Under the pieces are notes generated by a model. The model saw only the letters and a program-made list of their open reading frames with translations. It was not told the DNA's origin and did not search any database. Positions 1,644-62,794 of a stretch of DNA of 64,000 nucleotides are shown here, in pieces. The position numbers and the translations under genes were made by a program. The stretch is from positions 186,001 to 250,000 of the IMG/VR virus record IMGVR_UViG_3300045996_002337, one strand, 5' to 3'. How positions within the stretch are numbered: the stretch's first letter is position 1; every line of letters begins with the position of its first letter.

Positions 1644-2410
1644 GAATTGAACTCCTTGATAGCATTATCAGGTACATCGGCAGCTGCGATGAGAATAGAT
1701 TGGGTTGCCTTTGTTTCTACGGGATAATCCTGCCAAAGATACGTAAGAGCGGGGATGCGTGCTGGTTGATATACTTTTTCAAATTCTGTCTCCGTTATGG
1801 GAATCATTAGGATGCGTTCGGCCATGCTTTGCCCTAGTTCTTGAAATAGCCGTACAGGGGAACCGCCGACAATTAACATCGCGTCAACTTCACCCGTTAG
1901 AACCAGAAGAATGCTTTCTTCTGGAAGGCGGTCAACTTGAAGCCACTTGATGTTTAGCGCATTTCTGATGGTGTTGGCGGTAAACCACATTCCAGACCCA
2001 GGCAGCCCGCTTGCGACGCGCTTGCCATTGAGGTCCTTTAACGTCTTGATGCCGGATTTTTTATTGGCGATGATGGTAATTTCTTCACTGTAGAACGGCA
2101 TGACCATTTTGTAAACGGTCTTCGCCTTTGGTTCTGATCCGAGGATTGCATCGAGCGCGTCCTTTTGAACGAGCGCCAACCGATGGCCATTTTTAATTAC
2201 GGGAGGAGCAATCAGTGCGTTAATGTTAGCCAGCGAGCCTTGCGTTGGCTCTACGTTGATCTGAAACTGTGGACAGGCCTTTTGAATGTCTTCTGCAATG
2301 AGCGCATACGTGCCCTTTTGAAACCCGGTGTAGACGGTGTACAGCGGTTTACCTTGCCCGAACGTGAATGCGGGCAAGAGCAGCGTGACAACAAGCAAAA
2401 GACGTCTCAT
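1517..2410 (-). CDS. TAXI-family TRAP transporter periplasmic solute-binding protein
   Basis: Signal peptide; TGFQKGTY, TQGSLANI, LKDLNGKRVASGLPGSG, GEVDAMLIVGG, GHPKWKEI motifs. Confidence 0.8.
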   Translation of the reverse strand: MRRLLLVVTLLLPAFTFGQGKPLYTVYTGFQKGTYALIAEDIQKACPQFQINVEPTQGSLANINALIAPPVIKNGHRLALVQKDALDAILGSEPKAKTVYKMVMPFYSEEITIIANKKSGIKTLKDLNGKRVASGLPGSGMWFTANTIRNALNIKWLQVDRLPEESILLVLTGEVDAMLIVGGSPVRLFQELGQSMAERILMIPITETEFEKVYQPARIPALTYLWQDYPVETKATQSILIAAADVPDNAIKEFNSCLAKNLSAIKKFGHPKWKEINFPPQNLRQNQRPLLPQPRQK

Positions 2411-9219: not shown

Positions 9220-9738
9220 TTATTTTAACTCGTTTTTCTTCTCTATCTCAACTATTTGTTCAAGAACTGCGGTTGGGTTTGTTTCATCTGAAAGTCCCTG
9301 TGCTTCCGTGCGGTGTTCTTGTCTAACATCTAACCGCTCAGCTATCTTGTCAAGCAGCCGGAGGATAGCTGTGCTCTCGCGTTCAGCCAGCAGGTTAATT
9401 TGCAGGTCGAGTTTGTGTCGCTTGTCTGCTTCTTCAGCTAGACGATTCTGACTCAACAAAAGGAAACCAGAAAGGAGAATGGCCTCGAGCGAGACGAGTG
9501 TCGTGAGCAGGGTAAATGGGAACGGATCAAACTGCCATACAGTCAAATTAAGGGTTGTCCAGCCAATGAAGATGGCTAGATGAACGGCGATGAAGCTGAC
9601 GGTGCCAGCCCATTGTGCCACAGTATGTGCCACTTTTTCCGGGATGGATTGTTTCTTGAGCTGATCTTGCTCGTGCACAAAGATCGCCTCGATGTTCTCG
9701 TGGGTGATCTGCACTGGGTCATTAGGTGCTTCATTCAT
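9220..9738 (-). CDS. DUF1003 family membrane protein
   Basis: FDPFPFTLLTTLVSLEAILLSGFLLLSQNR...DLQINLLAE-x-E motif. Confidence 0.9.
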   Translation of the reverse strand: MNEAPNDPVQITHENIEAIFVHEQDQLKKQSIPEKVAHTVAQWAGTVSFIAVHLAIFIGWTTLNLTVWQFDPFPFTLLTTLVSLEAILLSGFLLLSQNRLAEEADKRHKLDLQINLLAERESTAILRLLDKIAERLDVRQEHRTEAQGLSDETNPTAVLEQIVEIEKKNELK

Positions 9739-9752
9739 GCACCTATTTATGT

Positions 9753-9879
9753 TGGTGGTGGCGGAAGGAATCGAACCTCCCCTGGCCGTTTATGAGTCGG
9801 ATAACCAATTACGGACGGTTGAGCTAACAACGAAAGGTGCAATCGATGTTTACCGTGCTGTCCACTACACTACGCCACC
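9753..9879 (-). ncRNA. tRNA/Y-RNA hybrid: tRNA acceptor, D and T arms with CCA, and a ~50-nt Ro60-helix-like domain in place of the anticodon arm
   Basis: GGTGGCG/CGCCACC-A-CCA, D arm, T loop TTCGATT; insert contains TCG-TTG[TTAGCT]CAA-C-CG and GGTTATCC/GATTGC, shared with the Y-like family. Confidence 0.6.
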
Positions 9880-10099: not shown

Positions 10100-10181
10100 T
10101 CTGAACAAAGCCTTGCGGCGGCGCGGTCGAGGGCGAGTTCAAGTAAAAGTTGATAACCCTGCGGGTGCGATCCGGTTCAGA
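10100..10181 (-). ncRNA. Y-RNA-like small RNA (no tRNA module)
   Basis: TCTGAA-C-CG...GGTTATC...pyrimidine-rich loop...GCC-GCAA-GGC-TTTG-TTCAGA; homologous to 13170..13248. Confidence 0.6.
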
Positions 10182-10193
10182 AATTTTGTGTGT

Positions 10194-10418
10194 TCAAACA
10201 GCTTCGAGACCCTTTGCGTTGACCTCGAGCTGTTTTCGGATGTACCGCATGAAGAGCATGGCCTTGTCTTCCGCAAGGAAGACACCATCACCACAGTCTT
10301 CGACAGGCACGACGAAGTCAAAGCCGTCGTCAGTCCGGTAGTGAAGCTCGTTCTTGCGATACATCATGAAGCGGACCCGTTTTCCAGGTCCGACAAGTTC
10401 TTTCAGAGTGCTCATCAC
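10194..10418 (-). CDS. hypothetical protein
   Basis: 74-aa ORF coupled to 10415..10771. Confidence 0.65.
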   Translation of the reverse strand: MMSTLKELVGPGKRVRFMMYRKNELHYRTDDGFDFVVPVEDCGDGVFLAEDKAMLFMRYIRKQLEVNAKGLEAV

Positions 10419-10771
10419 ACCGTGTCTCCAATAAGATGGGGCGCGAGGTCTGGTCGATCAGGGTACTTCGCATCGATGGCATCGATCGCAAGGTGGGGCG
10501 ACGTGCCTCGATCCAGTTCGTGGATCTTGGAGAAGCCATTTTCCTTCGTGATTAGTGACTCGTGAGGCGAGATGCCGCCACGATACTTGCCATCACCCTT
10601 CTTGTGCATGAGGTTGCCAGTTGCTGGGTCGATCGAGCCCCACTTTGGCGTGTGCTCGGTCTCGATCGGCTCGACGTAGTACGTCTTGCCGGTGCGATAG
10701 GAGTAGACGATGAACCTGCCCGTGTCGTCGGTGCGACGCAGAAACGCGGAATGTACTTCACGGCTGATCAT
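10415..10771 (-). CDS. hypothetical protein
   Basis: 118-aa ORF with good SD. Confidence 0.7.
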   Translation of the reverse strand: MISREVHSAFLRRTDDTGRFIVYSYRTGKTYYVEPIETEHTPKWGSIDPATGNLMHKKGDGKYRGGISPHESLITKENGFSKIHELDRGTSPHLAIDAIDAKYPDRPDLAPHLIGDTV

Positions 10772-10810
10772 CTTCTTTCTCCTTAAGGGTTATGAGCACT
10801 ATTGCTCGGG

Positions 10811-11146
10811 TTAATTTTTCTCGAATTTGGCTTTGAGCCGCTGATACTGAGCAAGTTCGGCTTCTTTCTTTTCCTTGCGTTGTTGCTTCTTGCGCTCCTT
10901 TGCAAGGAGCTCGATGCGTTCCATCAGTTCAGTATGAGCAGCCTCGGACGCAATGCGATCAGCTTCTTGCGCATCGGTTTCAAGCCGTTGATAGACCAAA
11001 TAGATTTCGTTATCGTAGTAGCCGTGCCCCCTCTGGATGACAGCCGACTCAATTTCTTCTGGAGACAAGTTCGCGAGCAAGTCGCTCAAGCGATGCTGAT
11101 TAGTGATTTCAAAGAGTTGAAAGGTTTCGGTAATCTTTTGCTTCAT
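10811..11146 (-). CDS. hypothetical protein (coiled-coil C-terminus)
   Basis: 111-aa ORF, SD GAGG. Confidence 0.65.
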   Translation of the reverse strand: MKQKITETFQLFEITNQHRLSDLLANLSPEEIESAVIQRGHGYYDNEIYLVYQRLETDAQEADRIASEAAHTELMERIELLAKERKKQQRKEKKEAELAQYQRLKAKFEKN

Positions 11147-11164
11147 AAAAACCTCTGTTTATTG

Positions 11165-11238
11165 TGGTGCTCAATGAAGGAATTGAACCTTCTCTTCATC
11201 CTTACCAAAGATGCGTACTGCCATTATACGAAGAGAGC
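11165..11238 (-). tRNA. tRNA-Thr(GGT)
   Basis: TT-GGT-AA; two acceptor mismatches; CCA. Confidence 0.8.
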
Positions 11239-11244
11239 ATGGAT

Positions 11245-11319
11245 TGGTGGTGATGGTGGGAATCGGACCCACGACACAGAGCTTATGAGACTCCTGCTTA
11301 ACCATTCAGCTTCATCACC
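11245..11319 (-). tRNA. tRNA-Met/Ile2(CAT)
   Basis: CT-CAT-AA; CCA. Confidence 0.8.
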
Positions 11320-11324
11320 ATGTT

Positions 11325-11397
11325 TGGCAAGCCTCCATGGATTTTAACCACGACCTCCGTTCGCGACACGGCGCACTGACAATTGTGCTAAAGACTT
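11325..11397 (-). tRNA. degenerate tRNA, anticodon CGC (Ala?)
   Basis: Cloverleaf with GT-CGC-GA loop, atypical T loop TTAAAAT, lacks the usual Ala acceptor sequence; CCA. Confidence 0.5.
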
Positions 11398-11403
11398 ATT
11401 GTT

Positions 11404-11479
11404 TGGCAACCCCGGTCAGACTCGAACTGACGCCCTTCGCGCTCAGAACGCGACGCTCTACCAACTAAGCTACGAGGCA
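11404..11479 (-). tRNA. tRNA-Gln(CTG)
   Basis: TT-CTG-AG, weak 1:72 pair, G73, CCA. Confidence 0.85.
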
Positions 11480-11488
11480 ACTGATTTT

Positions 11489-11562
11489 TGGCGATCCGTA
11501 GGGGAATCGAACCCCTTTCTTACGCTAGACAGGCGTAGATAATACCAATATATGAACGGACC
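11489..11562 (-). tRNA. tRNA-Asp(GTC)
   Basis: CT-GTC-TA, G73, CCA. Confidence 0.85.
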
Positions 11563-11567
11563 ATGTT

Positions 11568-11642
11568 TGGTGCCTGAGAAAGGAATCGAACCTTAGGTCT
11601 ACCGCTTATCAAGCGGGTGCTCTACCATTGAGCTACTCAGGC
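11568..11642 (-). tRNA. tRNA-Ile(GAT)
   Basis: TT-GAT-AA, CCA. Confidence 0.9.
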
Positions 11643-12012
11643 GTTTTTTGTTTCCTTTGCCACCTTTGGATGAGGCGGCACGGTGCATTTCCTTCCATCG
11701 CTCTTCACCGTATTTCGCGACGTTTTTCGCATATTGCGACGACCATGTTCCCGCTGCTTTTTGATCAAACAGATTGTCACTGGGCGTTCCCCAATACAGA
11801 TGTTTAGGGTTTGAACACGCGTGAACATTACACGCGTGGCACAGAAGGATCTTCATGCCTGCAGGAATTGTCGTTTTAAGCGTGTGAGCTAAAAGACCTC
11901 GATAATGACGGCTGTCCGCTCCTCCAATGAGAATACAGGGCTCAGTCAAATCTAAATGCGCAATACGTTCTGCCCGAGAGCGCTGTATATAGGCTTCAAT
12001 GTCTTCAAACAT
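11599..12012 (-). mobile_element. free-standing HNH (His-Me finger) homing-endonuclease-like gene inside the tRNA array
   Basis: LLCHACNVHACSNPKHLYWGTPSDN motif; own TATAAT promoter near 12019; stop codon lies inside tRNA-Ile. Confidence 0.7.
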
Positions 12013-12032
12013 GATGCATTATAACACAAATT

Positions 12033-12107
12033 TGGTACTCCTGACGGGTTTCGATCCCGCTTCTCAACCTTGAAAGGGTCGTGTCCTAGCCACTAGACGA
12101 CAGGAGT
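12033..12107 (-). tRNA. tRNA-Glu(TTC)
   Basis: CT-TTC-AA, CCA. Confidence 0.85.
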
Positions 12108-12109
12108 AT

Positions 12110-12183
12110 TGGTACCTGCAGAAGGAATCGAACCTTCTTCTCAACGATGTCAACGTCGCGCTCTACCATTGAGCTATGCGGGT
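12110..12183 (-). tRNA. tRNA-Val(GAC)
   Basis: TT-GAC-AT, CCA. Confidence 0.9.
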
Positions 12184-12189
12184 GATGTT

Positions 12190-12264
12190 TGGCGCCGACG
12201 ACGGGACTCGAACCCGCCTAAACCTCATAGACAGTGAGGTGTTCTCCCTGAGAACTACGTCGGC
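12190..12264 (-). tRNA. tRNA-Asp(GTC)
   Basis: CT-GTC-TA, G73, CCA. Confidence 0.85.
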
Positions 12265-12270
12265 AATGTT

Positions 12271-12346
12271 TGGCAAGGGAGGTGGGACTCGAACCCACAA
12301 CAGGCGCATTCAAAGTGCGGTGCTCTACCAATTGAGCTACTCCCCA
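12271..12346 (-). tRNA. tRNA-Gln(TTG)
   Basis: CT-TTG-AA, CCA. Confidence 0.9.
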
Positions 12347-12366
12347 ACAGAAATTTATGTCTTAAG

Positions 12367-12448
12367 CTCCACGATCTGGGCTCGAACCAGACTTGATCTT
12401 TCGATCGCGGATTAACAGTCCGCTGCCACACCCGGCGGCTCTCGTGGA
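12367..12448 (-). tRNA. tRNA-Asn(GTT)-like with long variable arm, no encoded CCA, flanks extend the acceptor stem
   Basis: GCGGA-CTGTTAA-TCCGC; GATC-GAAA-GATC variable arm; CTTAAGCTCCACGA/TCGTGGAGCTTAAG 14-bp stem. Confidence 0.65.
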
Positions 12449-12476
12449 GCTTAAGACACTTACATAATGTTCTTTG

Positions 12477-12548
12477 CTCCAGAGGCAGGGATCGAACCTA
12501 CGACGGACGCATTAACAGTGCGCTGCTCTACCGCTGAGCTACACTGGA
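12477..12548 (-). tRNA. tRNA-Asn(GTT), no encoded CCA
   Basis: Canonical cloverleaf; leader TGTTCTTTGC pairs with trailer GCAAAGAACA. Confidence 0.85.
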
Positions 12549-12577
12549 GCAAAGAACACGTTTCAAAAATACTTAGG

Positions 12578-12651
12578 AGTGACCAGAGGGACTTGAACCC
12601 TCATTATCTGCATTCACAGTGCAGCGCGTCTACCAATTCCGCCATGGCCAC
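12578..12651 (-). tRNA. tRNA-His(GTG), no encoded CCA
   Basis: CT-GTG-AA; leader ACTTAGG pairs with trailer CCTAAGT; C at -1 and T73 are atypical. Confidence 0.75.
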
Positions 12652-12668
12652 GCCTAAGTATTCTTACT

Positions 12669-12744
12669 TGGTACGTCTGAGAGGATTCGAACCTCCAACC
12701 TGAGCCTTCGTAGGACCCTGCTCTTCCAGTTGAGCTACAGACGT
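12669..12744 (-). tRNA. tRNA-Arg(ACG)
   Basis: CT-ACG-AA, CCA. Confidence 0.9.
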
Positions 12745-12750
12745 ATTGTT

Positions 12751-12826
12751 TGGTAGGGGCACAGGGATTCGAACCCTGACTTGACGGATTAAAAGTCCGC
12801 TGTGATAACCATTTCACCATACCCCC
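12751..12826 (-). tRNA. tRNA-Lys(TTT)
   Basis: CT-TTT-AA, CCA. Confidence 0.85.
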
Positions 12827-12841
12827 GTTAGGAGGTACGTT

Positions 12842-12887
12842 TGGCAGACGCGCTAGGCGTCGAAGACATTTGTCGCATTGCGCGTCC
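12842..12887 (-). ncRNA. 46-nt mini-tRNA-like element
   Basis: GGACGCG...CGCGTCT-G-CCA acceptor stem enclosing a small GACA-AA-TGTC hairpin. Confidence 0.4.
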
Positions 12888-12900
12888 TTTCTTTGTTGAT

Positions 12901-12972
12901 TGGCATCCCGTCAGAGAGTCGAACTCTGTCCATGCGTTTTGGAGACGACAGGCCCTAGCCGTAGGCCGAGAT
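12901..12972 (-). tRNA. degenerate tRNA-Trp(CCA)
   Basis: CT-CCA-AA loop, intact T arm and CCA, irregular D arm and anticodon stem. Confidence 0.6.
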
Positions 12973-12984
12973 ATTAACTTGATT

Positions 12985-13078
12985 TGGCTCCCTCGGACGG
13001 ACTCGAACCGCCATATTACGCCTTACGGCCTTTACGTCTGATTAACAGTCAGGTCTCTTACCATTAGAGTACAAGGGA
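12985..13078 (-). tRNA. tRNA-Asn(GTT) with 24-nt variable region
   Basis: CT-GTT-AA; variable arm GCC-GTAA-GGC; G73; CCA. Confidence 0.8.
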
Positions 13079-13086
13079 ATAGAACT

Positions 13087-13161
13087 TGGTGCGCCTCCCC
13101 AGAATCGAACTGGGCTCTCTCCGGTTAAGAGCCGGGACTTCGCCAGCAAAGTTTGAGACGC
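13087..13161 (-). tRNA. tRNA-Lys(CTT)
   Basis: CT-CTT-AA, CCA. Confidence 0.8.
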
Positions 13162-13169
13162 GAAGAAAG

Positions 13170-13248
13170 TCTGAACAAAAGCCTTGCGGCGTGCGGTCTC
13201 AAGGAGGTTCAATAAAAGTGATAACCTTGAAGTTGCGAGCGGTTCAGA
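13170..13248 (-). ncRNA. Y-RNA-like small RNA (no tRNA module)
   Basis: TCTGAA-C-CG...GGTTATC-ACTTTTA...GCC-GCAA-GGC-TTTTG-TTCAGA; homolog of 10100..10181. Confidence 0.6.
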
Positions 13249-13253
13249 TTGTT

Positions 13254-13328
13254 TGGCGCTCCGTAGGGGTTACGATCCCCTCTAGCCAGGTTGAAAGCCT
13301 GGTGACCTCACCAGATGTCTAACGGAGC
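13254..13328 (-). tRNA. tRNA-Glu(TTC)
   Basis: CT-TTC-AA, CCA. Confidence 0.85.
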
Positions 13329-13334
13329 ATTGTT

Positions 13335-13410
13335 TGGTGGGCCCTCACGGAATCGAACCGTGTCCTTCGGAGCTTCAATCCGACGTACGCACCAGCTATA
13401 CCAAAGACCC
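13335..13410 (-). tRNA. tRNA-Phe(GAA)
   Basis: TT-GAA-GC, CCA. Confidence 0.85.
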
Positions 13411-13418
13411 ATAAATTT

Positions 13419-13494
13419 TGGCTGGCCACCGCGGTCTCGAACCGCGAACCCCTGGTTTTGGAGACCAGTGCTCTGCCAATTGAGCTAGTGACCA
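13419..13494 (-). tRNA. tRNA-Trp(CCA)
   Basis: CT-CCA-AA, G73, CCA. Confidence 0.9.
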
Positions 13495-13744: not shown

Positions 13745-13790
13745 AAAAAACAACCCAGGGTCCAATCTTTCGAGAGGACCCTGGTTCTTG
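13745..13790 (-). terminator. intrinsic terminator (attenuator) upstream of tRNA array 1
   Basis: AACCAGGGTCC-loop-GGACCCTGGGTTG followed by TTTTTT on the minus strand. Confidence 0.85.
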
Positions 13791-13808
13791 TGAGTGTGGA
13801 AGAAGCGC

Positions 13809-17950: not shown

Positions 17951-19014
17951 TTTGCAAGCTCGTTTGGAATGAAGGCGCGGCCGGCCCGCCAGTGTTTTTG
18001 CGTTTGAACATGATTGGCGCGAACGAACTTTGCCACGCTCTTGCGAAAATCGCCGTAGCTAAACTCACCAGCAATCCGAACCACGTAACCTTCGTCCTTT
18101 TCAAAGTCTAGACTCTTCTCAATGTCACGAACAGTTTTCTCATCCCACATGCCATCATAAAGAACTGGGACAGGTGTTAGGCCGAGCAGCTCACACCAGA
18201 CGATGGTGTCATCCCACCTCAAGCAGCGGTTCTTTGCATCCCAAATGCTAAAGCACATGAAGTATGAAGGCAGGGCGGTGTAGTGAATCGAGTGCTCGGC
18301 CCAGAGGTTCTCGCCGCAAACACGCCAGCCTTCAGGAAGATTGAAGCAGACGTTCTCGATCAGGAACTTCTTGACCCAGGCCCGGTCTTCGCCACCACGG
18401 CTGTCAATCGAACGTGCGTGAATGTGACCATCGCTGTACGCGGTGGTGTTCTCACCGTCCATCTTCTTGGTGATGACTACACGGCGACCTTCAAACTGCG
18501 AGCAGTCCTTCAGGGCTTTGTCGTCGTCTTGTTTTCCAGGAGACCAGGGGAGGTGGAACGTCCGCTCGTACTTGACGTACGAGGTAAACAGATCCAACGC
18601 TCCACCCGCGGCCAGAACTTTCTGTACGGACTCGTCAAAGAAGAGCTCGCCCTTGGCGCGGCGACCGTCAGCAAGTACTGGGTTTCCCCATTTGTCGTAC
18701 TGATGGTCAGGGTAGAAGTGCGGAGGAACCACGATCTTCGTGATGCCTGCTGCTTGACGCACGTCCTCGACCGAGTAGAACGTTTTCTCGCAGAGAAGAT
18801 GATGCAGCTCGCACACGGTCGCGCCGTTCTCGAGATAGTAGCCACCATCTGGCCACAGCCGCCGCTCGAGAATGTGATGCGCGTCGAGCTTGCCCTCAGG
18901 GGTTTGCGCTGCAGTGATTCCGCAGAAAACGCACTTGTGACCATCTCGAAGGAACACACCTTCGCGGAAGTTGTCTCGAGTAAGTAGTTTGGGCTCTGCC
19001 ATGTTATTCTCCAT
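17947..19014 (-). CDS. HNH-domain / RNA ligase fusion protein
   Basis: N-terminal CVFC...DAHHI...NGATVC-x-x-HH; C-terminal ligase motifs KMDGEN, CGEN, EGYVVR, K-F-V-R. Confidence 0.85.
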   Translation of the reverse strand: MENNMAEPKLLTRDNFREGVFLRDGHKCVFCGITAAQTPEGKLDAHHILERRLWPDGGYYLENGATVCELHHLLCEKTFYSVEDVRQAAGITKIVVPPHFYPDHQYDKWGNPVLADGRRAKGELFFDESVQKVLAAGGALDLFTSYVKYERTFHLPWSPGKQDDDKALKDCSQFEGRRVVITKKMDGENTTAYSDGHIHARSIDSRGGEDRAWVKKFLIENVCFNLPEGWRVCGENLWAEHSIHYTALPSYFMCFSIWDAKNRCLRWDDTIVWCELLGLTPVPVLYDGMWDEKTVRDIEKSLDFEKDEGYVVRIAGEFSYGDFRKSVAKFVRANHVQTQKHWRAGRAFIPNELAK

Positions 19015-30246: not shown

Positions 30247-30620
30247 CGCGTCGCTCCCACATCTCGCGTTTGAAGAAATCGTTCCACCTTAAGTTCTCTA
30301 AGAGTTATTCTTAACCTATTATACCCTCTTTCGTGGCAAACGGTCAAAAATAATTCCTCAATCTCTTTTGGCTTTTGATCGCGCCTCTCATAGACCTCCT
30401 GTAGGATGCCTTCAACTGGGAAGGTAATGTGCCTATCAGCAGCTCGCTGTTGTAGGGTCTCTGGAGGCACCCCAATGTCACGTACAGCAGCAATGGTGCC
30501 TGCATACGATGCAACTTTTTGACAGTCAGAAAGTGGAGGGGAAGGTGGGAGGCTAGAACAGCCTCCCAGGGCGAGGAGAAGAGTGGTTACTTGATAACCA
30601 GCGTAGCGGTTGAGCAGCAA
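30243..30620 (-). CDS. putative lipoprotein
   Basis: LGGC lipobox. Confidence 0.5.
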   Translation of the reverse strand: MLLNRYAGYQVTTLLLALGGCSSLPPSPPLSDCQKVASYAGTIAAVRDIGVPPETLQQRAADRHITFPVEGILQEVYERRDQKPKEIEELFLTVCHERGYNRLRITLRELKVERFLQTRDVGATR

Positions 30621-33617: not shown

Positions 33618-34712
33618 TCAGGTCAGAGCACCAGCAATTGCTTCGCGGCGAGCCTGCTCAATTGCCTGACCGAGCTCCTTACCTGGAGGAATATCAGGAA
33701 AATCTGCAGCTTTAACTGGCTTTGTAACTGAGGCTGCCCTCCACAGATCAAAAGAGTTCACCTTAGGTGACTCACCAATCGATGGCATCAGTTCAACTGC
33801 TTGCACCAAATCATCGAAGGTAGAGCCTTCGCTCCATGCCTTCGCTGCTTTCAGTAAGTTGAAGACGTCATCAACGGTGCGTTCCATGGTTCGAACCCGA
33901 TTCACATTCTCAAACAGCGTTCGCGTGCGAGTGTCAGCGCTGACACGAACAGTGGTCGAAGACGGAACAGCTGCGAGCGCAGTGTGAAACATGACGCGTT
34001 CTGCTTCATCAACAAACACCGAGACTACTGACGCAGCGGCGATGACAGATTTCAGTCGAGCTGCATCAATGTGACCATACAGGCCTTCGAAGAACAAAAC
34101 GTTTTCATCGCAGTGCATGGCCTTCATGAGCCAGAAAAAGCGCCACGGTGTTTCTTCTTGGAAGACCTTGTGGAGCTCTGCCCAGAAGCGTTCAGCGGGC
34201 AGTTGATTCAGATCGCCGTTCTCGACCATGCGCTTCGCCAAATCCATCGTTTCGGTTGCAACACTGAAGTTGTCGTAGCGTGCAAAGAAGCGGGCTAGCC
34301 GCACCACCCGCAGTGGATCTTCACCGAAGGCAGCAGAGACGTGGCGCAGAACGCGCGCTTCCAGATCTTGCTGTCCACCCCAAGGATCGATGATTTTGCC
34401 GTCCTCATCCTCAGCCATCGCATTGATGGTCAGGTCTCGTCTCGACAGGTCGTCGGCCAGGGTCACACCGTCGGTTTCAACTGCGAAGCCGAGGTAGCCC
34501 TTGCCCGTCTTGCGCTCGGTTCTAGCAAGGGCGAACTCCTCACCACGTTCGTTCAGAAACACGGGGAAATCCGCACCCACCTGCTGAAAGCCCATGGCAA
34601 TCATTTGCTCGGGCGTGGAGCCGACAACGACGTAGTCAAAATCCTTCGGATCTCGCCCCATCAGCTTGTCACGAACTGCACCACCGACCGTGTAGACCTG
34701 ATATGTTTTCAT
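33618..34712 (-). CDS. cca: tRNA nucleotidyltransferase (class II CCA-adding enzyme)
   Basis: VGGAVRD...[45 protein letters not shown]. Confidence 0.92.
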
Positions 34713-57481: not shown

Positions 57482-57618
57482 AAAGCATAGAAACAACAAA
57501 AGGCGCTATCGGGAATTCCTGCCCCTGGACCACCTGCAGGATGCCACGAATCGAACGGGCTTGGGTTTATTTCCAATAATAGTAGATAACCGACAACAAA
57601 CGGTTGATTCTATGCTTT
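57482..57618 (-). ncRNA. Y-RNA-like RNA with degenerate T-loop module
   Basis: AAAGCATAGAA terminal stem; CAA-C-CG / TTG-TTG helix; GTTATC/GATAGC; TTCGATT hairpin. Confidence 0.55.
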
Positions 57619-59437: not shown

Positions 59438-59568
59438 AGCAACAAAGGAGCGATAACGAGTCTGCCTTTCGGCGAGGCGGCTGTCCTACCATTAGACTAC
59501 AGCTCATTGAGCCGGCGGGAATCGAACCCACGTTAACTGCTTGGGATAAACGTCATCTATCGGTTGCT
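59438..59568 (-). ncRNA. YrlA-like Y RNA (permuted tRNA module)
   Basis: GCAA-C-CGA...T arm (GTGGG TTCGATT CCCGC), acceptor closed by a loop (CGGCTC AAT GAGCTG), D arm (GTCT AATGGTA GGAC)...GCC-GAAA-GGC...TTG-TTGC. Confidence 0.75.
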
Positions 59569-61260: not shown

Positions 61261-61321
61261 GTCAACAAAAGATACGGCGAGGGGTTGCCTAATGAATGAT
61301 AACCCTCAACCTACGGTTGAC
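61261..61321 (-). ncRNA. minimal Y-RNA-like RNA (61 nt)
   Basis: GTCAA-C-CG...GAGGGTTATC...CCCCTC...TTTTG-TTGAC. Confidence 0.55.
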
Positions 61322-61479: not shown

Positions 61480-61613
61480 GAGATTTGGCGGGCAAGTAGC
61501 CTTCAATAGGGGCCCAATCCTATGAAGCGGTATCGGATCTACAAGACAGAAGACCTTCCATTCCGGTTTTTGATGTCTGACGCTTAGCGTAACCGGCGAA
61601 ACATTCAGCTGAT

Positions 61614-61688
61614 GTAAGACGGCAGGAGTCGAACCTGCAAAGTATCCCGTGGTCGGTGTGCCAATTCCCGTTTAACTACCACGTCTTA
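61614..61688 (-). ncRNA. tRNA-like RNA lacking an anticodon arm
   Basis: TAAGACG/CGTCTTA acceptor, GCAGG-TTCGACT-CCTGC T arm, GGAATTGGCA D-loop-like segment. Confidence 0.5.
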
Positions 61689-61694
61689 ACATTT

Positions 61695-62444: not shown

Positions 62445-62520
62445 TTTTACCTCTGAATTTTCCTTTTGAGAAGGTGTGCGTTGACAGTTTGGACAGAGCA
62501 ACGCCCAGAAACACATGAGA

Positions 62521-62613
62521 TGTTGAACGACGGGATTCGAACCCGCACATTGCGCCGGTGATTAGCCGGTGCTAAGTATACCAATTCCTCACGTTATGCA
62601 AACACGTTCAACA
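62521..62613 (-). ncRNA. tRNA-like RNA, anticodon AAT, 9-bp acceptor, 12-nt insert before the D arm
   Basis: TGTTGAACG/CGTTCAACA; CT-AAT-CA loop; T arm intact; no CCA. Confidence 0.55.
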
Positions 62614-62663
62614 AAATCAACCATGCGCGGCTACCAATTACGCCACGAGTGCATTAAAACAAG

Positions 62664-62794
62664 AGCAACAAAGGGCGATAACGAAAAGCCTTTCGGCGAG
62701 CCGGCTGCCTTACCACTTGGCGACTATCAATTGCTCGATAGGTAGGATTCGAACCTACGTTTAGCTGGATAGATAATCATCATCAACGGTTGCT
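62664..62794 (-). ncRNA. YrlA-like Y RNA (permuted tRNA module)
   Basis: GCAA-C-CG...T arm (GTAGG TTCGAAT CCTAC), 7-bp acceptor capped by GCAA tetraloop, D arm (GCC AAGTGGTAA GGC)...GCC-GAAA-GGC...TTG-TTGC. Confidence 0.8.

What the first reader, a model, noticed from the sequence alone, without database searches (positions are those of the whole stretch)
10100..13248. Two homologous ~80-nt Y-RNA-like genes without a tRNA module embedded in tRNA array 1
Seen: 10100..10181 and 13170..13248 are clear homologs with a TCTGAA/TTCAGA terminal stem, bulged C then C-G and G.U pairs, GGTTATC, a pyrimidine-rich internal segment and a GCC-GCAA-GGC hairpin. Known: the Ro60-binding site of Y RNAs is a terminal helix with a bulged C followed by C-G, G.U and A-U pairs, next to a pyrimidine-rich loop. 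No Ro60/TROVE gene is in this window. Inference: these are phage Y RNAs that tether or sequester a host or phage Ro60-exonuclease complex.
Basis: partly seen in the sequence, partly recalled or inferred. Interest (0 to 1): 0.72.

Follow-up and report, generated by a model that had tools for sequence, protein, structure and literature searches.

The report
Phage Y RNA genes inside tRNA arrays
The two ~80-nt elements are real, structured small-RNA genes of the Y RNA family (partners of the Ro60 RNA-quality-control protein). The 350-kb phage does encode Ro60 just outside the window, so they are diverged new members of a known RNA class sitting in an unusual place, between tRNA genes.

Summary
Window 10100-10181 and 13170-13248 are paralogs with 68 identical positions. 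They read on the minus strand, like all 47 tRNAs.

Each has these features:
- a 7-bp terminal helix
- a bulged C followed by G
- a covarying upper stem that ends in GGUUAUC
- a U-rich loop
- a GCC-GCAA-GGC mini-hairpin

Rfam does not recognise either element. Three results support a Y RNA reading.
- **Ro60 gene.** The genome, a 349,660-bp IMG/VR phage, encodes a full-length Ro60 (TROVE plus Ro60-vWA domains). It lies 13-16 kb away on the same strand.
- **Paralogs.** The genome holds at least nine elements with the same ACCG...GGUUAUC...UUU-G module. Two sit directly upstream of Ro60 and two carry YrlA-like tRNA modules.
- **Covariance model.** A model built from relatives finds this module next to Ro60 in phages and in 68 of 80 bacterial Ro60 loci. 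All 155 bacterial hits are on the Ro60 strand. In the phage-locus alignment behind the model, 95% of cells pair and 14 of 16 pairs show compensatory change.

An ortholog with compensatory changes sits in the tRNA array of the closest relative.

Most likely these are Y RNAs cut out of the tRNA precursor and bound by the phage Ro60. Binding and expression are untested. Neither element has the full CGAA motif.

This is a new member of a known kind.

The parts
10100..10181 (-). el1, an 82-nt Y RNA-like gene. Lower helix 10175-10181 with 10100-10106. Bulged C at 10174. GGUUAUC at 10152-10158. GCC-GCAA-GGC hairpin at 10110-10119. It lies between a small ORF (10194-10418) and tRNA-Thr(cgt).
13170..13248 (-). 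el2, a 79-nt Y RNA-like gene. Lower helix 13242-13248 with 13170-13176. Bulged C at 13241. Upper stem 13225-13231 with 13198-13204. GGUUAUC at 13220-13226. Hairpin at 13181-13190. It occupies a tRNA slot, 5 nt after tRNA-Glu(ttc) and 8 nt before tRNA-Lys(ctt).
61261..61321 (-). el3, a 61-nt short-form paralog without the extra hairpin, between tRNA-Tyr and tRNA-Leu. It is the best match in this genome to the family model R2 (38.9 bits, E 2.5e-5).
57484..57616 (-). el6, a 133-nt paralog with a long lower helix (9+4 bp), the same C-G...GGUUAUC...UUUU-G module and a T-loop-like insert. It follows tRNA-Leu(taa).
59438..59568 (-). el8, a 131-nt paralog. It has the same AGCAAC-C-G / UUU-GUUGCU lower helix, enclosing T-arm, capped acceptor-like and D-arm modules. 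It matches Rfam YrlA RF02553 over the whole model at 39.1 bits, E 2.4e-7, below the gathering score of 69.
62664..62794 (-). el10, a 131-nt second YrlA-like paralog of el8 (RF02553 21.3 bits, E 0.025).
9753..9879 (-). el4, a tRNA-shaped RNA with a 7-bp acceptor stem, D-arm, T-arm and encoded ACCA. The anticodon-arm position carries a circularly permuted copy of the module: UUUC-GUUG-loop-CAAC-C-G-N11-GGUUAUC.

Best explanation
el1 and el2 are diverged, tRNA-module-free members of the Y RNA family and partners of the phage's own Ro60.

Shown:
- They are paralogous structured RNA genes on the tRNA strand.
- They share a specific module with at least seven other elements in this genome. The module is a 6-11-bp terminal helix, a bulged C then G, a covarying upper stem ending in GG, UUAUC at the start of the loop, and a U-rich bulge before the 3' strand.
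- That module is genetically linked to Ro60 across phages and bacteria.
- The phage encodes an intact Ro60.

Inferred:
1. They are transcribed as part of the polycistronic tRNA-array precursor. They are freed when RNase P and the tRNA 3'-end enzymes cut out the neighbouring tRNAs. el2 sits 5 and 8 nt from its neighbours.
2. Exonucleases trim them back to the 7-bp helix, where the phage Ro60 binds the bulged-C helix and stabilises them.
3. The variable part acts as adaptor or gate. This part is the GGUUAUC motif, the U-rich loop and, in el1 and el2, an extra GNRA-capped mini-hairpin. It would couple Ro60 to a partner enzyme or regulate access to its cavity.
4. The phage has no PNPase-type or RtcB gene, so the partner would be a host exoribonuclease such as PNPase, as shown in vitro for Thermus phage phiLo. 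Alternatively it could be one of the phage's own RNA-repair enzymes (three Rnl-type ligase domains, a Thg1-like enzyme, a CCA-adding enzyme).
5. The many paralogs with different loops would give one Ro60 several specificities during an infection that depends on about 50 phage tRNAs.
For: Ro60 gene:
- A 566-aa ORF at genome 181253-182953(-) has TROVE and vWA_Ro60 domains.
- It matches D. radiodurans Rsr at E 4e-102 and Xenopus Ro60 at E 6.5e-96.

Family in this genome:
- The motif occurs 7 times, all on the minus strand, against 1.3 expected.
- The full descriptor gives 5 hits against 0.375 expected.
- Two copies lie directly upstream of Ro60, at genome 182932-183229 and 183260-183366.
- el8 joins the same lower helix to a YrlA-like tRNA module.

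Family elsewhere:
- Model R1/R2 finds 28 hits at E<0.1 in 31 related phage Ro60 loci (plus el3 in the window). All are on the Ro60 strand, 18 within 1 kb upstream of Ro60, and often in tandem.
- In alignment A6, 95.2% of cells pair and 14 of 16 pairs show double changes. Slid controls pair at 35-48%.
- In A6 the bulged C and the G are each 28/29, and GGUUAYC is essentially invariant.
- There are 155 hits at E<=0.01 in 80 bacterial Ro60 loci, all on the Ro60 strand, in about 68 loci.
- Hits also occur in the cultured phages Limpid, Zooman and ET08, some between tRNA genes.

Link of el1 and el2 to the family:
- The closest relative (76% Ro60 identity) has an 83-nt ortholog between tRNA-Ile and tRNA-Gln. 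It shows compensatory changes in the lower helix, the upper stem and the mini-hairpin, where the loop GCAA becomes CUCG.
- The loop and upper stem of that ortholog are nearly identical to a 63-nt short form in another relative's tRNA array. That short form scores 42.3 bits, E 3e-6, with R2.

Architecture: it matches the published Ro60 site, a seven-bp helix with a single bulged C and a bulge on the opposite strand (PMC4726728). The family consensus carries the bacterial GNCGAAN0-1G motif (PMC4201824).

Precedent: phage Y RNA-like RNAs bind a phage Ro60 and host PNPase in vitro (PMC12135203).
Against: - el1 and el2 get no hit from Rfam Y_RNA, YrlA or sbRNA models.
- With the session's own family model, el2 gets only a local 15.9-bit match (E 0.8) and el1 gets none. 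Their membership therefore rests on shared motifs plus a chain of orthologs.
- They read CCGG and CCGC where the family has CGAA. In phiLo Yrl2, each CGAA base contributes 3-4 fold to affinity.
- They lie 13 and 16 kb from Ro60, outside the 4-kb window used as a criterion by Chen et al. 2014.
- There is no expression evidence. The metatranscriptome contigs that share words with the stretch cover only neighbouring tRNA-like sequence of other organisms.
- The pair counts come from an alignment fitted to the model.
Confidence: 0.68

Rival explanations
1. The elements are cis-acting modules rather than free RNAs. The Y-type helices embedded in the polycistronic tRNA precursor recruit Ro60, and through it an exonuclease, to the precursor itself. 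This would help trim or triage the flanking tRNAs, and the module would be degraded afterwards.
For: - The elements sit at tRNA-like spacing inside arrays in this phage and in relatives, including cultured actinophages.
- No promoter- or terminator-like signals flank them.
- One variant (el4 type) is physically fused into a tRNA-shaped RNA.
Against: - The closed 7-bp terminal helix with conserved ends is the design of a stand-alone Y RNA.
- Family members next to Ro60 stand in tandem without tRNAs.
- In every studied system Y RNAs accumulate as stable, Ro60-protected species (PMC4201824).
Confidence: 0.12
2. The elements are Y RNA relics or specialised derivatives that no longer bind Ro60. They keep the fold but have lost the CGAA contact motif. 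They either do nothing or bind another protein through the conserved CGCA / ACCGCAC internal loop and the mini-hairpin.
For: - CGAA is replaced by CCGG and CCGC.
- The match to the family model is weak.
- The distance from Ro60 is 13-16 kb.
- The subtype-specific conserved internal-loop sequences and hairpin are shared with the ortholog in the nearest relative.
Against: - Two paralogs and an ortholog keep the helix, bulged C, G and GGUUAUC, with compensatory changes. This indicates selection on the Y-type fold.
- Positions after CG vary across this phage clade even in copies directly upstream of Ro60, which read CGUC, CGAA, CGCA and CGGC.
- Vertebrate Ro60 sites read CCGA, not GNCGAA.
Confidence: 0.12
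3. The elements are decoys for host anticodon nucleases. The apical 3-4-bp mini-stem with the 7-nt loop C-U-U-U-U-A-Y imitates the anticodon stem-loop of tRNA-Lys(UUU), a classical target of anticodon nucleases, and soaks them up.
For: - el1, el2 and the ortholog in the nearest relative all have a 7-nt loop CUUUUAC or CUUUUAU closed by a short stem.
- The phage carries a tRNA arsenal and RNA-repair genes.
Against: - The next relative has CUUCUAC in that loop.
- Loops of the wider family are merely U-rich and not conserved.
- U-rich loops are typical of Y RNAs.
- Nothing else in the element resembles a tRNA (no tRNA-model hit at E<=10).
Confidence: 0.05
4. The elements are decayed tRNA genes or other array debris with a chance resemblance to Y RNA.
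For: They have tRNA-like length, a 7-bp terminal helix and a position in a tRNA slot.
Against: - There is no D- or T-loop motif and no tRNA-model hit.
- Two copies are kept at 84% identity with compensatory changes.
- An ortholog is conserved in a relative.
- The motif shows enrichment and complete strand bias.
- The family is linked to Ro60.
Confidence: 0.03

Closest known systems
Bacterial 'long hairpin' Y RNAs without a full tRNA module: S. Typhimurium YrlB, M. smegmatis YrlB, D. radiodurans Yrn2 (Chen et al. 2014, PMC4201824)
   Same: - Ro60-linked small RNAs encoded on the Ro60 strand.
[quoted passage not shown]
- The published M. smegmatis YrlA and YrlB probe sequences imply UUACC and UAUC at the expected place. 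This is my reading of the probes.
- The session's model hits short forms next to Ro60 in Mycobacterium and Nocardia loci.
   Different: - el1 and el2 are 13-16 kb from Ro60, inside a tRNA array.
- They read ACCGG and ACCGC instead of GNCGAA.
- They carry an extra GNRA-capped mini-hairpin in the 3' bulge.
- No binding data exist for them.
YrlA (Rfam RF02553), the tRNA-mimicking bacterial and phage Y RNA
   Same: - The lower-helix design is the same.
- Two paralogs in this window (59438-59568 and 62664-62794) have the identical helix plus T, D and capped acceptor modules. They match RF02553 at 39.1 and 21.3 bits.
- YrlA was reported in 22 phages near Ro60.
   Different: - el1 and el2 have no tRNA-like module and no RF02553 hit.
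- Even the YrlA-like paralogs stay below the gathering score of 69.
Thermus phage phiLo Yrl1 and Yrl2 with phiRo60 (PMC12135203)
   Same: - They are phage-encoded stem-bulge-stem RNAs without a tRNA module, paired with a phage Ro60.
- The phage lacks PNPase. In phiLo the RNAs bridge Ro60 to host PNPase in vitro.
   Different: - The phiLo RNAs lie directly upstream of Ro60 and have CGAA.
- phiRo60 is only distantly related to this phage's Ro60 (E 6e-5, against 1e-96 to 1e-102 for the animal and Deinococcus proteins).
Metazoan Y RNA (RF00019) and nematode stem-bulge RNA (RF01656)
   Same: - A seven-bp lower helix, a single bulged C followed by G-U, an opposite-strand bulge, an upper stem ending in GGG, then UUAUC at the start of the loop.
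- Family members in a related phage locus reach 31.7 bits (Y_RNA) and 33.2 and 32.5 bits (sbRNA). The gathering score is 38 in both cases.
   Different: - All hits are below threshold.
- el1, el2 and el3 themselves give no hit.
- There is no Pol III context or La-binding U tail.
- Homology versus convergence is not resolved.

Membership tests
Y RNA (functional class: small RNA bound by Ro60) | A Ro60/TROVE protein is available in the same genome or host | tested here: met
   The 566-aa ORF at genome 181253-182953(-) has TROVE (100 bits) and vWA_Ro60 (171 bits) domains. It matches Rsr 2NVO at E 4e-102.
Y RNA (functional class: small RNA bound by Ro60) | The 5' and 3' ends pair in a helix of about 7 bp, with a single bulged C and a bulge on the opposite strand | tested here: met
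   Both copies have the 7-bp helix UCUGAAC/GUUCAGA, an unpaired C, then G opposite UUU(U). The 3' bulge is enlarged by a mini-hairpin. The helix covaries in the ortholog and across the family.
Y RNA (functional class: small RNA bound by Ro60) | Conserved Ro60-contact sequence (bacterial GNCGAAN0-1G / CGAA; vertebrate GGUCCGA) | tested here: not met
   el1 reads GAACCGGAU and el2 reads GAACCGCUC, so only C-C-G is kept. In the family alignment CGAA is present in 18 of 29 sequences, and the C and G in 28 of 29.
Y RNA (functional class: small RNA bound by Ro60) | Encoded near Ro60 on the same strand (within 4 kb in Chen et al. 2014) | tested here: inconclusive
   The strand is the same but the distances are 13.1 and 16.2 kb. 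Other copies of the module lie 0-0.4 kb upstream of Ro60.
Y RNA (functional class: small RNA bound by Ro60) | Physical binding to Ro60 and Ro60-dependent accumulation | not testable with these tools
   No RNA data cover the elements.
Rfam Y_RNA RF00019, sbRNA RF01656 and YrlA RF02553 | Covariance-model score at or above the gathering threshold | tested here: not met
   There is no hit at E<=10 on el1, el2 or el3. Relatives reach 31.7 of 38 bits (Y_RNA), 33.2 of 38 (sbRNA) and 43 of 69 (YrlA).
Ro60-linked GGUUAUC stem-bulge family (session model R2) | Significant match to the model built from Ro60-adjacent elements | tested here: inconclusive
   el3 scores 38.9 bits at E 2.5e-5. el2 gets a local match only, 15.9 bits at E 0.8. 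el1 gets no hit at E<=10. The link comes through orthologs: L036 15494-15576 has the el2 architecture, and L038 8974-9036 has the same loop and scores 42.3 bits.
tRNA (RF00005) | Cloverleaf with D and T arms, and a model score of at least 29 bits | tested here: not met
   ARAGORN and Rfam report nothing on either element, even at E<=10.

The most novel reading that the evidence does not exclude
The upper-stem-GG / UUAUC loop motif has so far been discussed as a feature of vertebrate Y RNAs and nematode sbRNAs and tied to DNA-replication initiation. On this reading it is instead an ancient, Ro60-linked part of Y RNAs shared by animals, bacteria and phages. Phage and bacterial short Y RNAs would then be true homologs of animal Y RNAs. 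Phages would also have spread this module through their tRNA arrays, even grafting a circularly permuted copy into a tRNA body, to couple Ro60 to tRNA surveillance during infection.
Probability: 0.3. Interest if true: 0.8.

Novelty: new member of a known kind. Interest (0 to 1): 0.5.

Why it matters
Ro60 and Y RNAs are conserved from bacteria to humans, where Ro60 is a lupus and Sjogren autoantigen. Their function in bacteria and phages is still only partly understood, and only a few bacterial and phage Y RNAs have been studied experimentally.

This phage carries at least nine Y RNA paralogs of four architectures:
- short hairpin
- hairpin plus mini-hairpin
- YrlA-like
- permuted inside a tRNA body

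Most are interleaved with tRNA genes, and they sit beside RNA ligase, Thg1-like and CCA-adding genes. That points to Ro60 ribonucleoproteins as part of a phage tRNA maintenance or counter-defence kit, and it supplies natural variants for binding studies.

The covariance model made here picks up unannotated Y RNA candidates next to Ro60 in most bacterial and phage loci examined, including well-studied actinophages. Y RNA repertoires are therefore probably much larger than annotated.

For el1 and el2 themselves the result is more modest. They are diverged members of a known class.

Tried and rejected
- **Rfam.** Searches at gathering thresholds and at E<=10 on 5-kb and 110-120-nt slices found nothing on el1, el2 or el3.
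- **Megablast** of the region against GenBank phages found no match.
- **MAFFT** alignments of the elements (A1, A2, A3, A7) put the stems out of register. They were not used for pair counts. A two-sequence seed (A4) plus alignment by the model was used instead.
- **Strict subtype pattern** scanned over IMG/VR. It returned the ortholog in the nearest relative plus three hits in tRNA-free contigs (L039, L040, L042) that I judged chance or coding sequence and rejected.
- **Candidate copy at window 30593-30611.** I set it aside because it lies inside overlapping minus-strand ORFs.
- **Expression.** No DNA-independent evidence was found. The RNA runs sharing words with 12980-13420 hold only tRNA-like pieces at 90-95% likeness, and nothing covers 13160-13250.
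- **Complex prediction** with Ro60 and el2 was not folded, because this job type gets no verdict with RNA. It is not evidence either way.
- **Partner enzymes in the phage.** RtcB (PF01139) and the RNase_PH/PNPase domain (PF01138) are absent.
- **Neighbouring small ORFs** (10194-11146, 11599-12012) have no Pfam family. The ORF at 9220-9738 is DUF1003.
- **Supplementary tables** of Chen et al. 2014 and two Wolin-lab reviews are not held.

Full report
**What is there.** The window is bases 186001-250000 of a 349,660-bp, about 97% complete IMG/VR virus record. It holds 47 tRNA genes in two arrays, all on the minus strand.

The two flagged stretches, 10100-10181 (el1) and 13170-13248 (el2), are clear paralogs. 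They share 68 identical positions, with an alignment score of 45 against a maximum of 7 in 2000 shuffles. Read on the minus strand, each has the following features:
- a 7-bp terminal helix UCUGAAC/GUUCAGA
- an unpaired C then G
- an imperfect middle region
- an upper stem that ends in GG, followed by UUAUC
- a short apical stem with a 7-nt U-rich loop
- a GCC-GCAA-GGC mini-hairpin on the 3' side
- UUU(U) and the 3' strand of the helix

The minus strand is the RNA strand. The U-G pairs of the upper stems would be mismatches on the plus strand, and the tRNAs run the same way.

Differences between the copies cluster in the upper stem and include two compensatory changes. el2 fills a tRNA slot exactly, 5 nt after tRNA-Glu with its encoded CCA and 8 nt before tRNA-Lys. 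el1 lies between a small ORF and tRNA-Thr. No promoter- or terminator-like sites flank them.

**Known-family searches.** Rfam gives no match to either element at gathering thresholds or at E<=10, including on a 121-nt slice. ARAGORN and the tRNA model also see nothing.

**The Ro60 gene.** A search of the whole genome with Pfam TROVE finds a gene at 181.3-183.0 kb on the minus strand. This is about 3 kb left of the window, and 13.1 and 16.2 kb from el1 and el2.

The 566-aa product has TROVE and Ro60-type vWA domains. It aligns over its full length with D. radiodurans Rsr (E 4e-102), human-type RO60 (1e-99) and Xenopus Ro60 (6.5e-96). Its neighbours include NADAR and Thg1-like genes. Elsewhere the genome has three Rnl-type RNA ligase domains and a CCA-adding enzyme, but no RtcB and no PNPase-type domain.

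**A family within the genome.**
- The motif ACCG-N(3-30)-GGTTATC occurs seven times, all on the minus strand between 183 and 247 kb, against 1.3 expected.
- Requiring a terminal helix and a U-rich 3' side leaves five hits, against 0.375 expected.

Besides el1 and el2, the members are:
- el3, a 61-nt short form between two tRNAs (61261-61321)
- el6, a 133-nt form with a long helix (57484-57616)
- el8 (59438-59568) and el10 (62664-62794), two 131-nt forms in which the same helix (AGCAAC-C-G ... UUU-GUUGCU) encloses T-arm, capped acceptor and D-arm modules. They match Rfam YrlA over the whole model at 39.1 bits (E 2.4e-7) and 21.3 bits, both below the threshold of 69.
- el7, a 298-nt form with an 11-bp helix, and el9, a 107-nt form, in tandem directly upstream of Ro60
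- el4, a tRNA-shaped RNA (9753-9879) described in the side observations

The lower-helix module of el1 and el2 is therefore the one used by YrlA-like RNAs and by the RNAs next to Ro60 in the same genome.

**The family elsewhere.** Thirty-two IMG/VR loci encode relatives of this Ro60. A covariance model seeded from two short forms (R1) found 28 matches at E<0.1 in 31 of these loci, plus el3 in the window. All 28 are on the Ro60 strand. Eighteen lie within 1 kb upstream of Ro60, often as tandem runs of three or four.

In the resulting alignment A6:
- 95.2% of cells pair, against 63% in shuffles and 35-48% when partners are slid.
- 14 of 16 pairs show compensatory double changes.
- The alignment was fitted to the model, which favours the structure.
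- The bulged C and the following G are each 28/29. GGUUAYC is essentially invariant. CGAA is present in 18 of 29.

The consensus reads CGGGC-C-GAAG...GGUUAUC...CC...UUG-CCCG. That is the bacterial GNCGAAN0-1G motif of Chen et al. 2014, set in the 'seven-bp helix, bulged C, opposite bulge' arrangement described for vertebrate Ro60 sites.

The rebuilt model R2 gave these results:
- el3 scores 38.9 bits (E 2.5e-5).
- It hits Streptomyces phage Limpid, Microbacterium phage Zooman and Mycobacterium phage ET08, partly between tRNA genes.
- It gives 155 hits at E<=0.01 in 80 bacterial Ro60 loci from many phyla. All are on the Ro60 strand, immediately up- or downstream of Ro60, in about 68 of the loci.
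- Longer hits in Nocardia carry a T-arm insert, so they are YrlA-type.

In one related phage locus the short forms also reach 31.7 bits against metazoan Y_RNA and 33 bits against nematode sbRNA, with a threshold of 38 for both. A 43-bit YrlA match lies beside them.

**Tying el1 and el2 to the family.** R2 gives el2 only a local 15.9-bit match over the upper stem and loop, and gives el1 nothing. Their 5' spacer is longer, the 3' bulge holds a 10-nt hairpin, and they read ACCGG and ACCGC instead of GNCGAA.

The link is by orthologs.
- The nearest relative (76% Ro60 identity) has an 83-nt element between tRNA-Ile and tRNA-Gln with the el2 layout. It shares the conserved CGCA and ACCGCAC stretches. 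It has a lower helix changed by compensation (UUCUUUGAC/GUCGAAGAA), an upper stem ACAAGG/CCUUGU, and the mini-hairpin kept with another loop, GCC-CUCG-GGC.
- Its upper stem and loop are almost identical to a 63-nt short form in the tRNA array of another relative. That short form scores 42.3 bits (E 3e-6) with R2.
- A further relative has about eight such elements in a tRNA array 95 kb from its Ro60.

Placement of Y-type genes among tRNA genes is therefore a conserved habit of these phages.

**Mechanism.** *Shown:* these are structured, conserved RNA genes of a Ro60-linked family, in a phage with an intact Ro60.

*Inferred:*
- They are co-transcribed with the tRNAs and released by tRNA end-processing.
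- They are trimmed to the helix and protected by Ro60.
- The variable half adapts or gates Ro60.

By analogy, Y RNA tethers Ro60 to PNPase in D. radiodurans and S. Typhimurium, and phiLo Yrl RNAs bridge the phage Ro60 to host PNPase and dampen it in vitro. Because this phage lacks PNPase and RtcB, a host exonuclease or the phage's own RNA-repair enzymes are the candidate partners.

The weak points are the missing CGAA, the sub-threshold model scores and the complete lack of expression or binding data. I put about 0.85 on family membership and about 0.65-0.7 on actual Ro60 binding.

**Rivals.**
- Cis-acting Ro60 recruitment sites in the precursor: 0.12.
- Derivatives that no longer bind Ro60: 0.12.
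- Anticodon-loop decoys, since the loop CUUUUAY resembles the tRNA-Lys(UUU) loop: 0.05. The next relative has CUUCUAC in that loop.
- tRNA debris: 0.03.

**Novelty.** Phage Y RNAs are known. YrlA has been reported in 22 phages and Yrl1 and Yrl2 in phiLo. Y RNAs without tRNA modules are also known (YrlB, Yrn2, animal Y RNAs). el1 and el2 are new, diverged members.

The papers I could search do not describe the following:
- placement of Y RNA genes inside tRNA arrays
- the number of paralogs per genome
- the permuted tRNA-embedded form
- the near-invariant GGUUAYC motif shared with animal Y RNAs and sbRNAs

**Side observation: el4.** The RNA at 9753-9879 has an acceptor stem, D-arm, T-arm and encoded ACCA. 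The place of its anticodon arm holds UUUC-GUUG-[loop]-CAAC-C-G-N11-GGUUAUC, a circular permutation of the lower helix. Orthologs in two relatives keep this layout with compensatory changes: GUCGCA-[GCAA]-UGUGAC and GUUGG-[CAACG]-CCAAC.

Noticed in passing
window 9753-9879 (-); L036 12772-12897 (-); L008 about 1992-2127 (+): A tRNA-shaped RNA with a 7-bp acceptor stem, D-arm, T-arm and encoded ACCA. Its anticodon-arm position carries a circularly permuted Y module: U-run, 3' strand, capping loop, 5' strand, C-G, N11, GGUUAUC. The layout is conserved with compensatory changes in two relatives. It has no Rfam match.
   Followed up: partly
window 59438-59568 (-) and 62664-62794 (-): Two YrlA-like paralogs with T-arm, capped acceptor and D-arm inside the same lower helix as el1 and el2. 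Their RF02553 scores are 39.1 and 21.3 bits, below the gathering score, so standard annotation would miss them.
   Followed up: yes
outside the window: genome 181253-183366 (L003 11253-13366, minus strand): The Ro60 gene (TROVE plus vWA_Ro60) with two tandem Y-like elements directly upstream, of 298 nt and 107 nt. The longest-ORF TTG start of Ro60 overlaps the 3' strand of the 298-nt element, so the true start is probably further downstream. NADAR, Thg1-like, HNH, NUDIX and PrkA genes lie nearby.
   Followed up: partly
window 18022-18483 (-) and 34344-34697 (-); genome 278776-279321 and 283989-284459: RNA-repair and maturation genes: three RNA_ligase (PF09414) domains and a CCA-adding / PolyA_pol (PF01743) enzyme. 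RtcB and PNPase-type domains are absent.
   Followed up: partly
L043 3627-3970 (Mycobacterium phage ET08); L044 1289-2665 (Streptomyces phage Limpid); L045 374-1500 and 3892-4002 (Microbacterium phage Zooman): The family model hits several unannotated elements in cultured actinophages. Some lie between tRNA genes. One in ET08 overlaps the annotated hypothetical CDS gp219 just upstream of Ro60, which may therefore be a mis-call.
   Followed up: partly
L026 9359-9948; L072 5822-6996; L025 9348-9932: Tandem runs of four to seven Y-like elements flank Ro60 in phage and bacterial loci. In L026 the short forms come close to the Rfam thresholds for metazoan Y_RNA (31.7 of 38 bits) and nematode sbRNA (33.2 of 38 bits).
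   Followed up: partly
window 12827-12984, 61480-61694, 62445-62663 (-): Other inter-tRNA gaps contain T-arm-like hairpins (GTTCGA motifs) that neither ARAGORN nor Rfam calls as tRNAs. They may be further tRNA-like or Y-like RNAs, or interrupted tRNAs.
   Followed up: no
window 12366-12448 and 12985-13078 (-): Two tRNA-Asn(gtt) calls are unusually long, at 83 and 94 nt, which suggests insertions or introns. A relative also has a 92-nt tRNA-Asn (L036 15298-15389).
   Followed up: no
window about 13745-13795 (-): A strong hairpin followed by a U run (CCAGGGUCC...GGACCCUGG then UUGUUUUUU) lies upstream of the first tRNA of array 1. It looks like an intrinsic terminator separating the array from the preceding genes. 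The simple scan did not list it.
   Followed up: no
L046 (contig NZ_JAZQPV010000081.1): A 36.6-kb contig binned into an Acinetobacter MAG encodes a Ro60 75% identical to this phage's. It has an ACCGAAAGG...GGTTATC element about 450 nt upstream. It is probably a related phage fragment and only a weak host hint.
   Followed up: no
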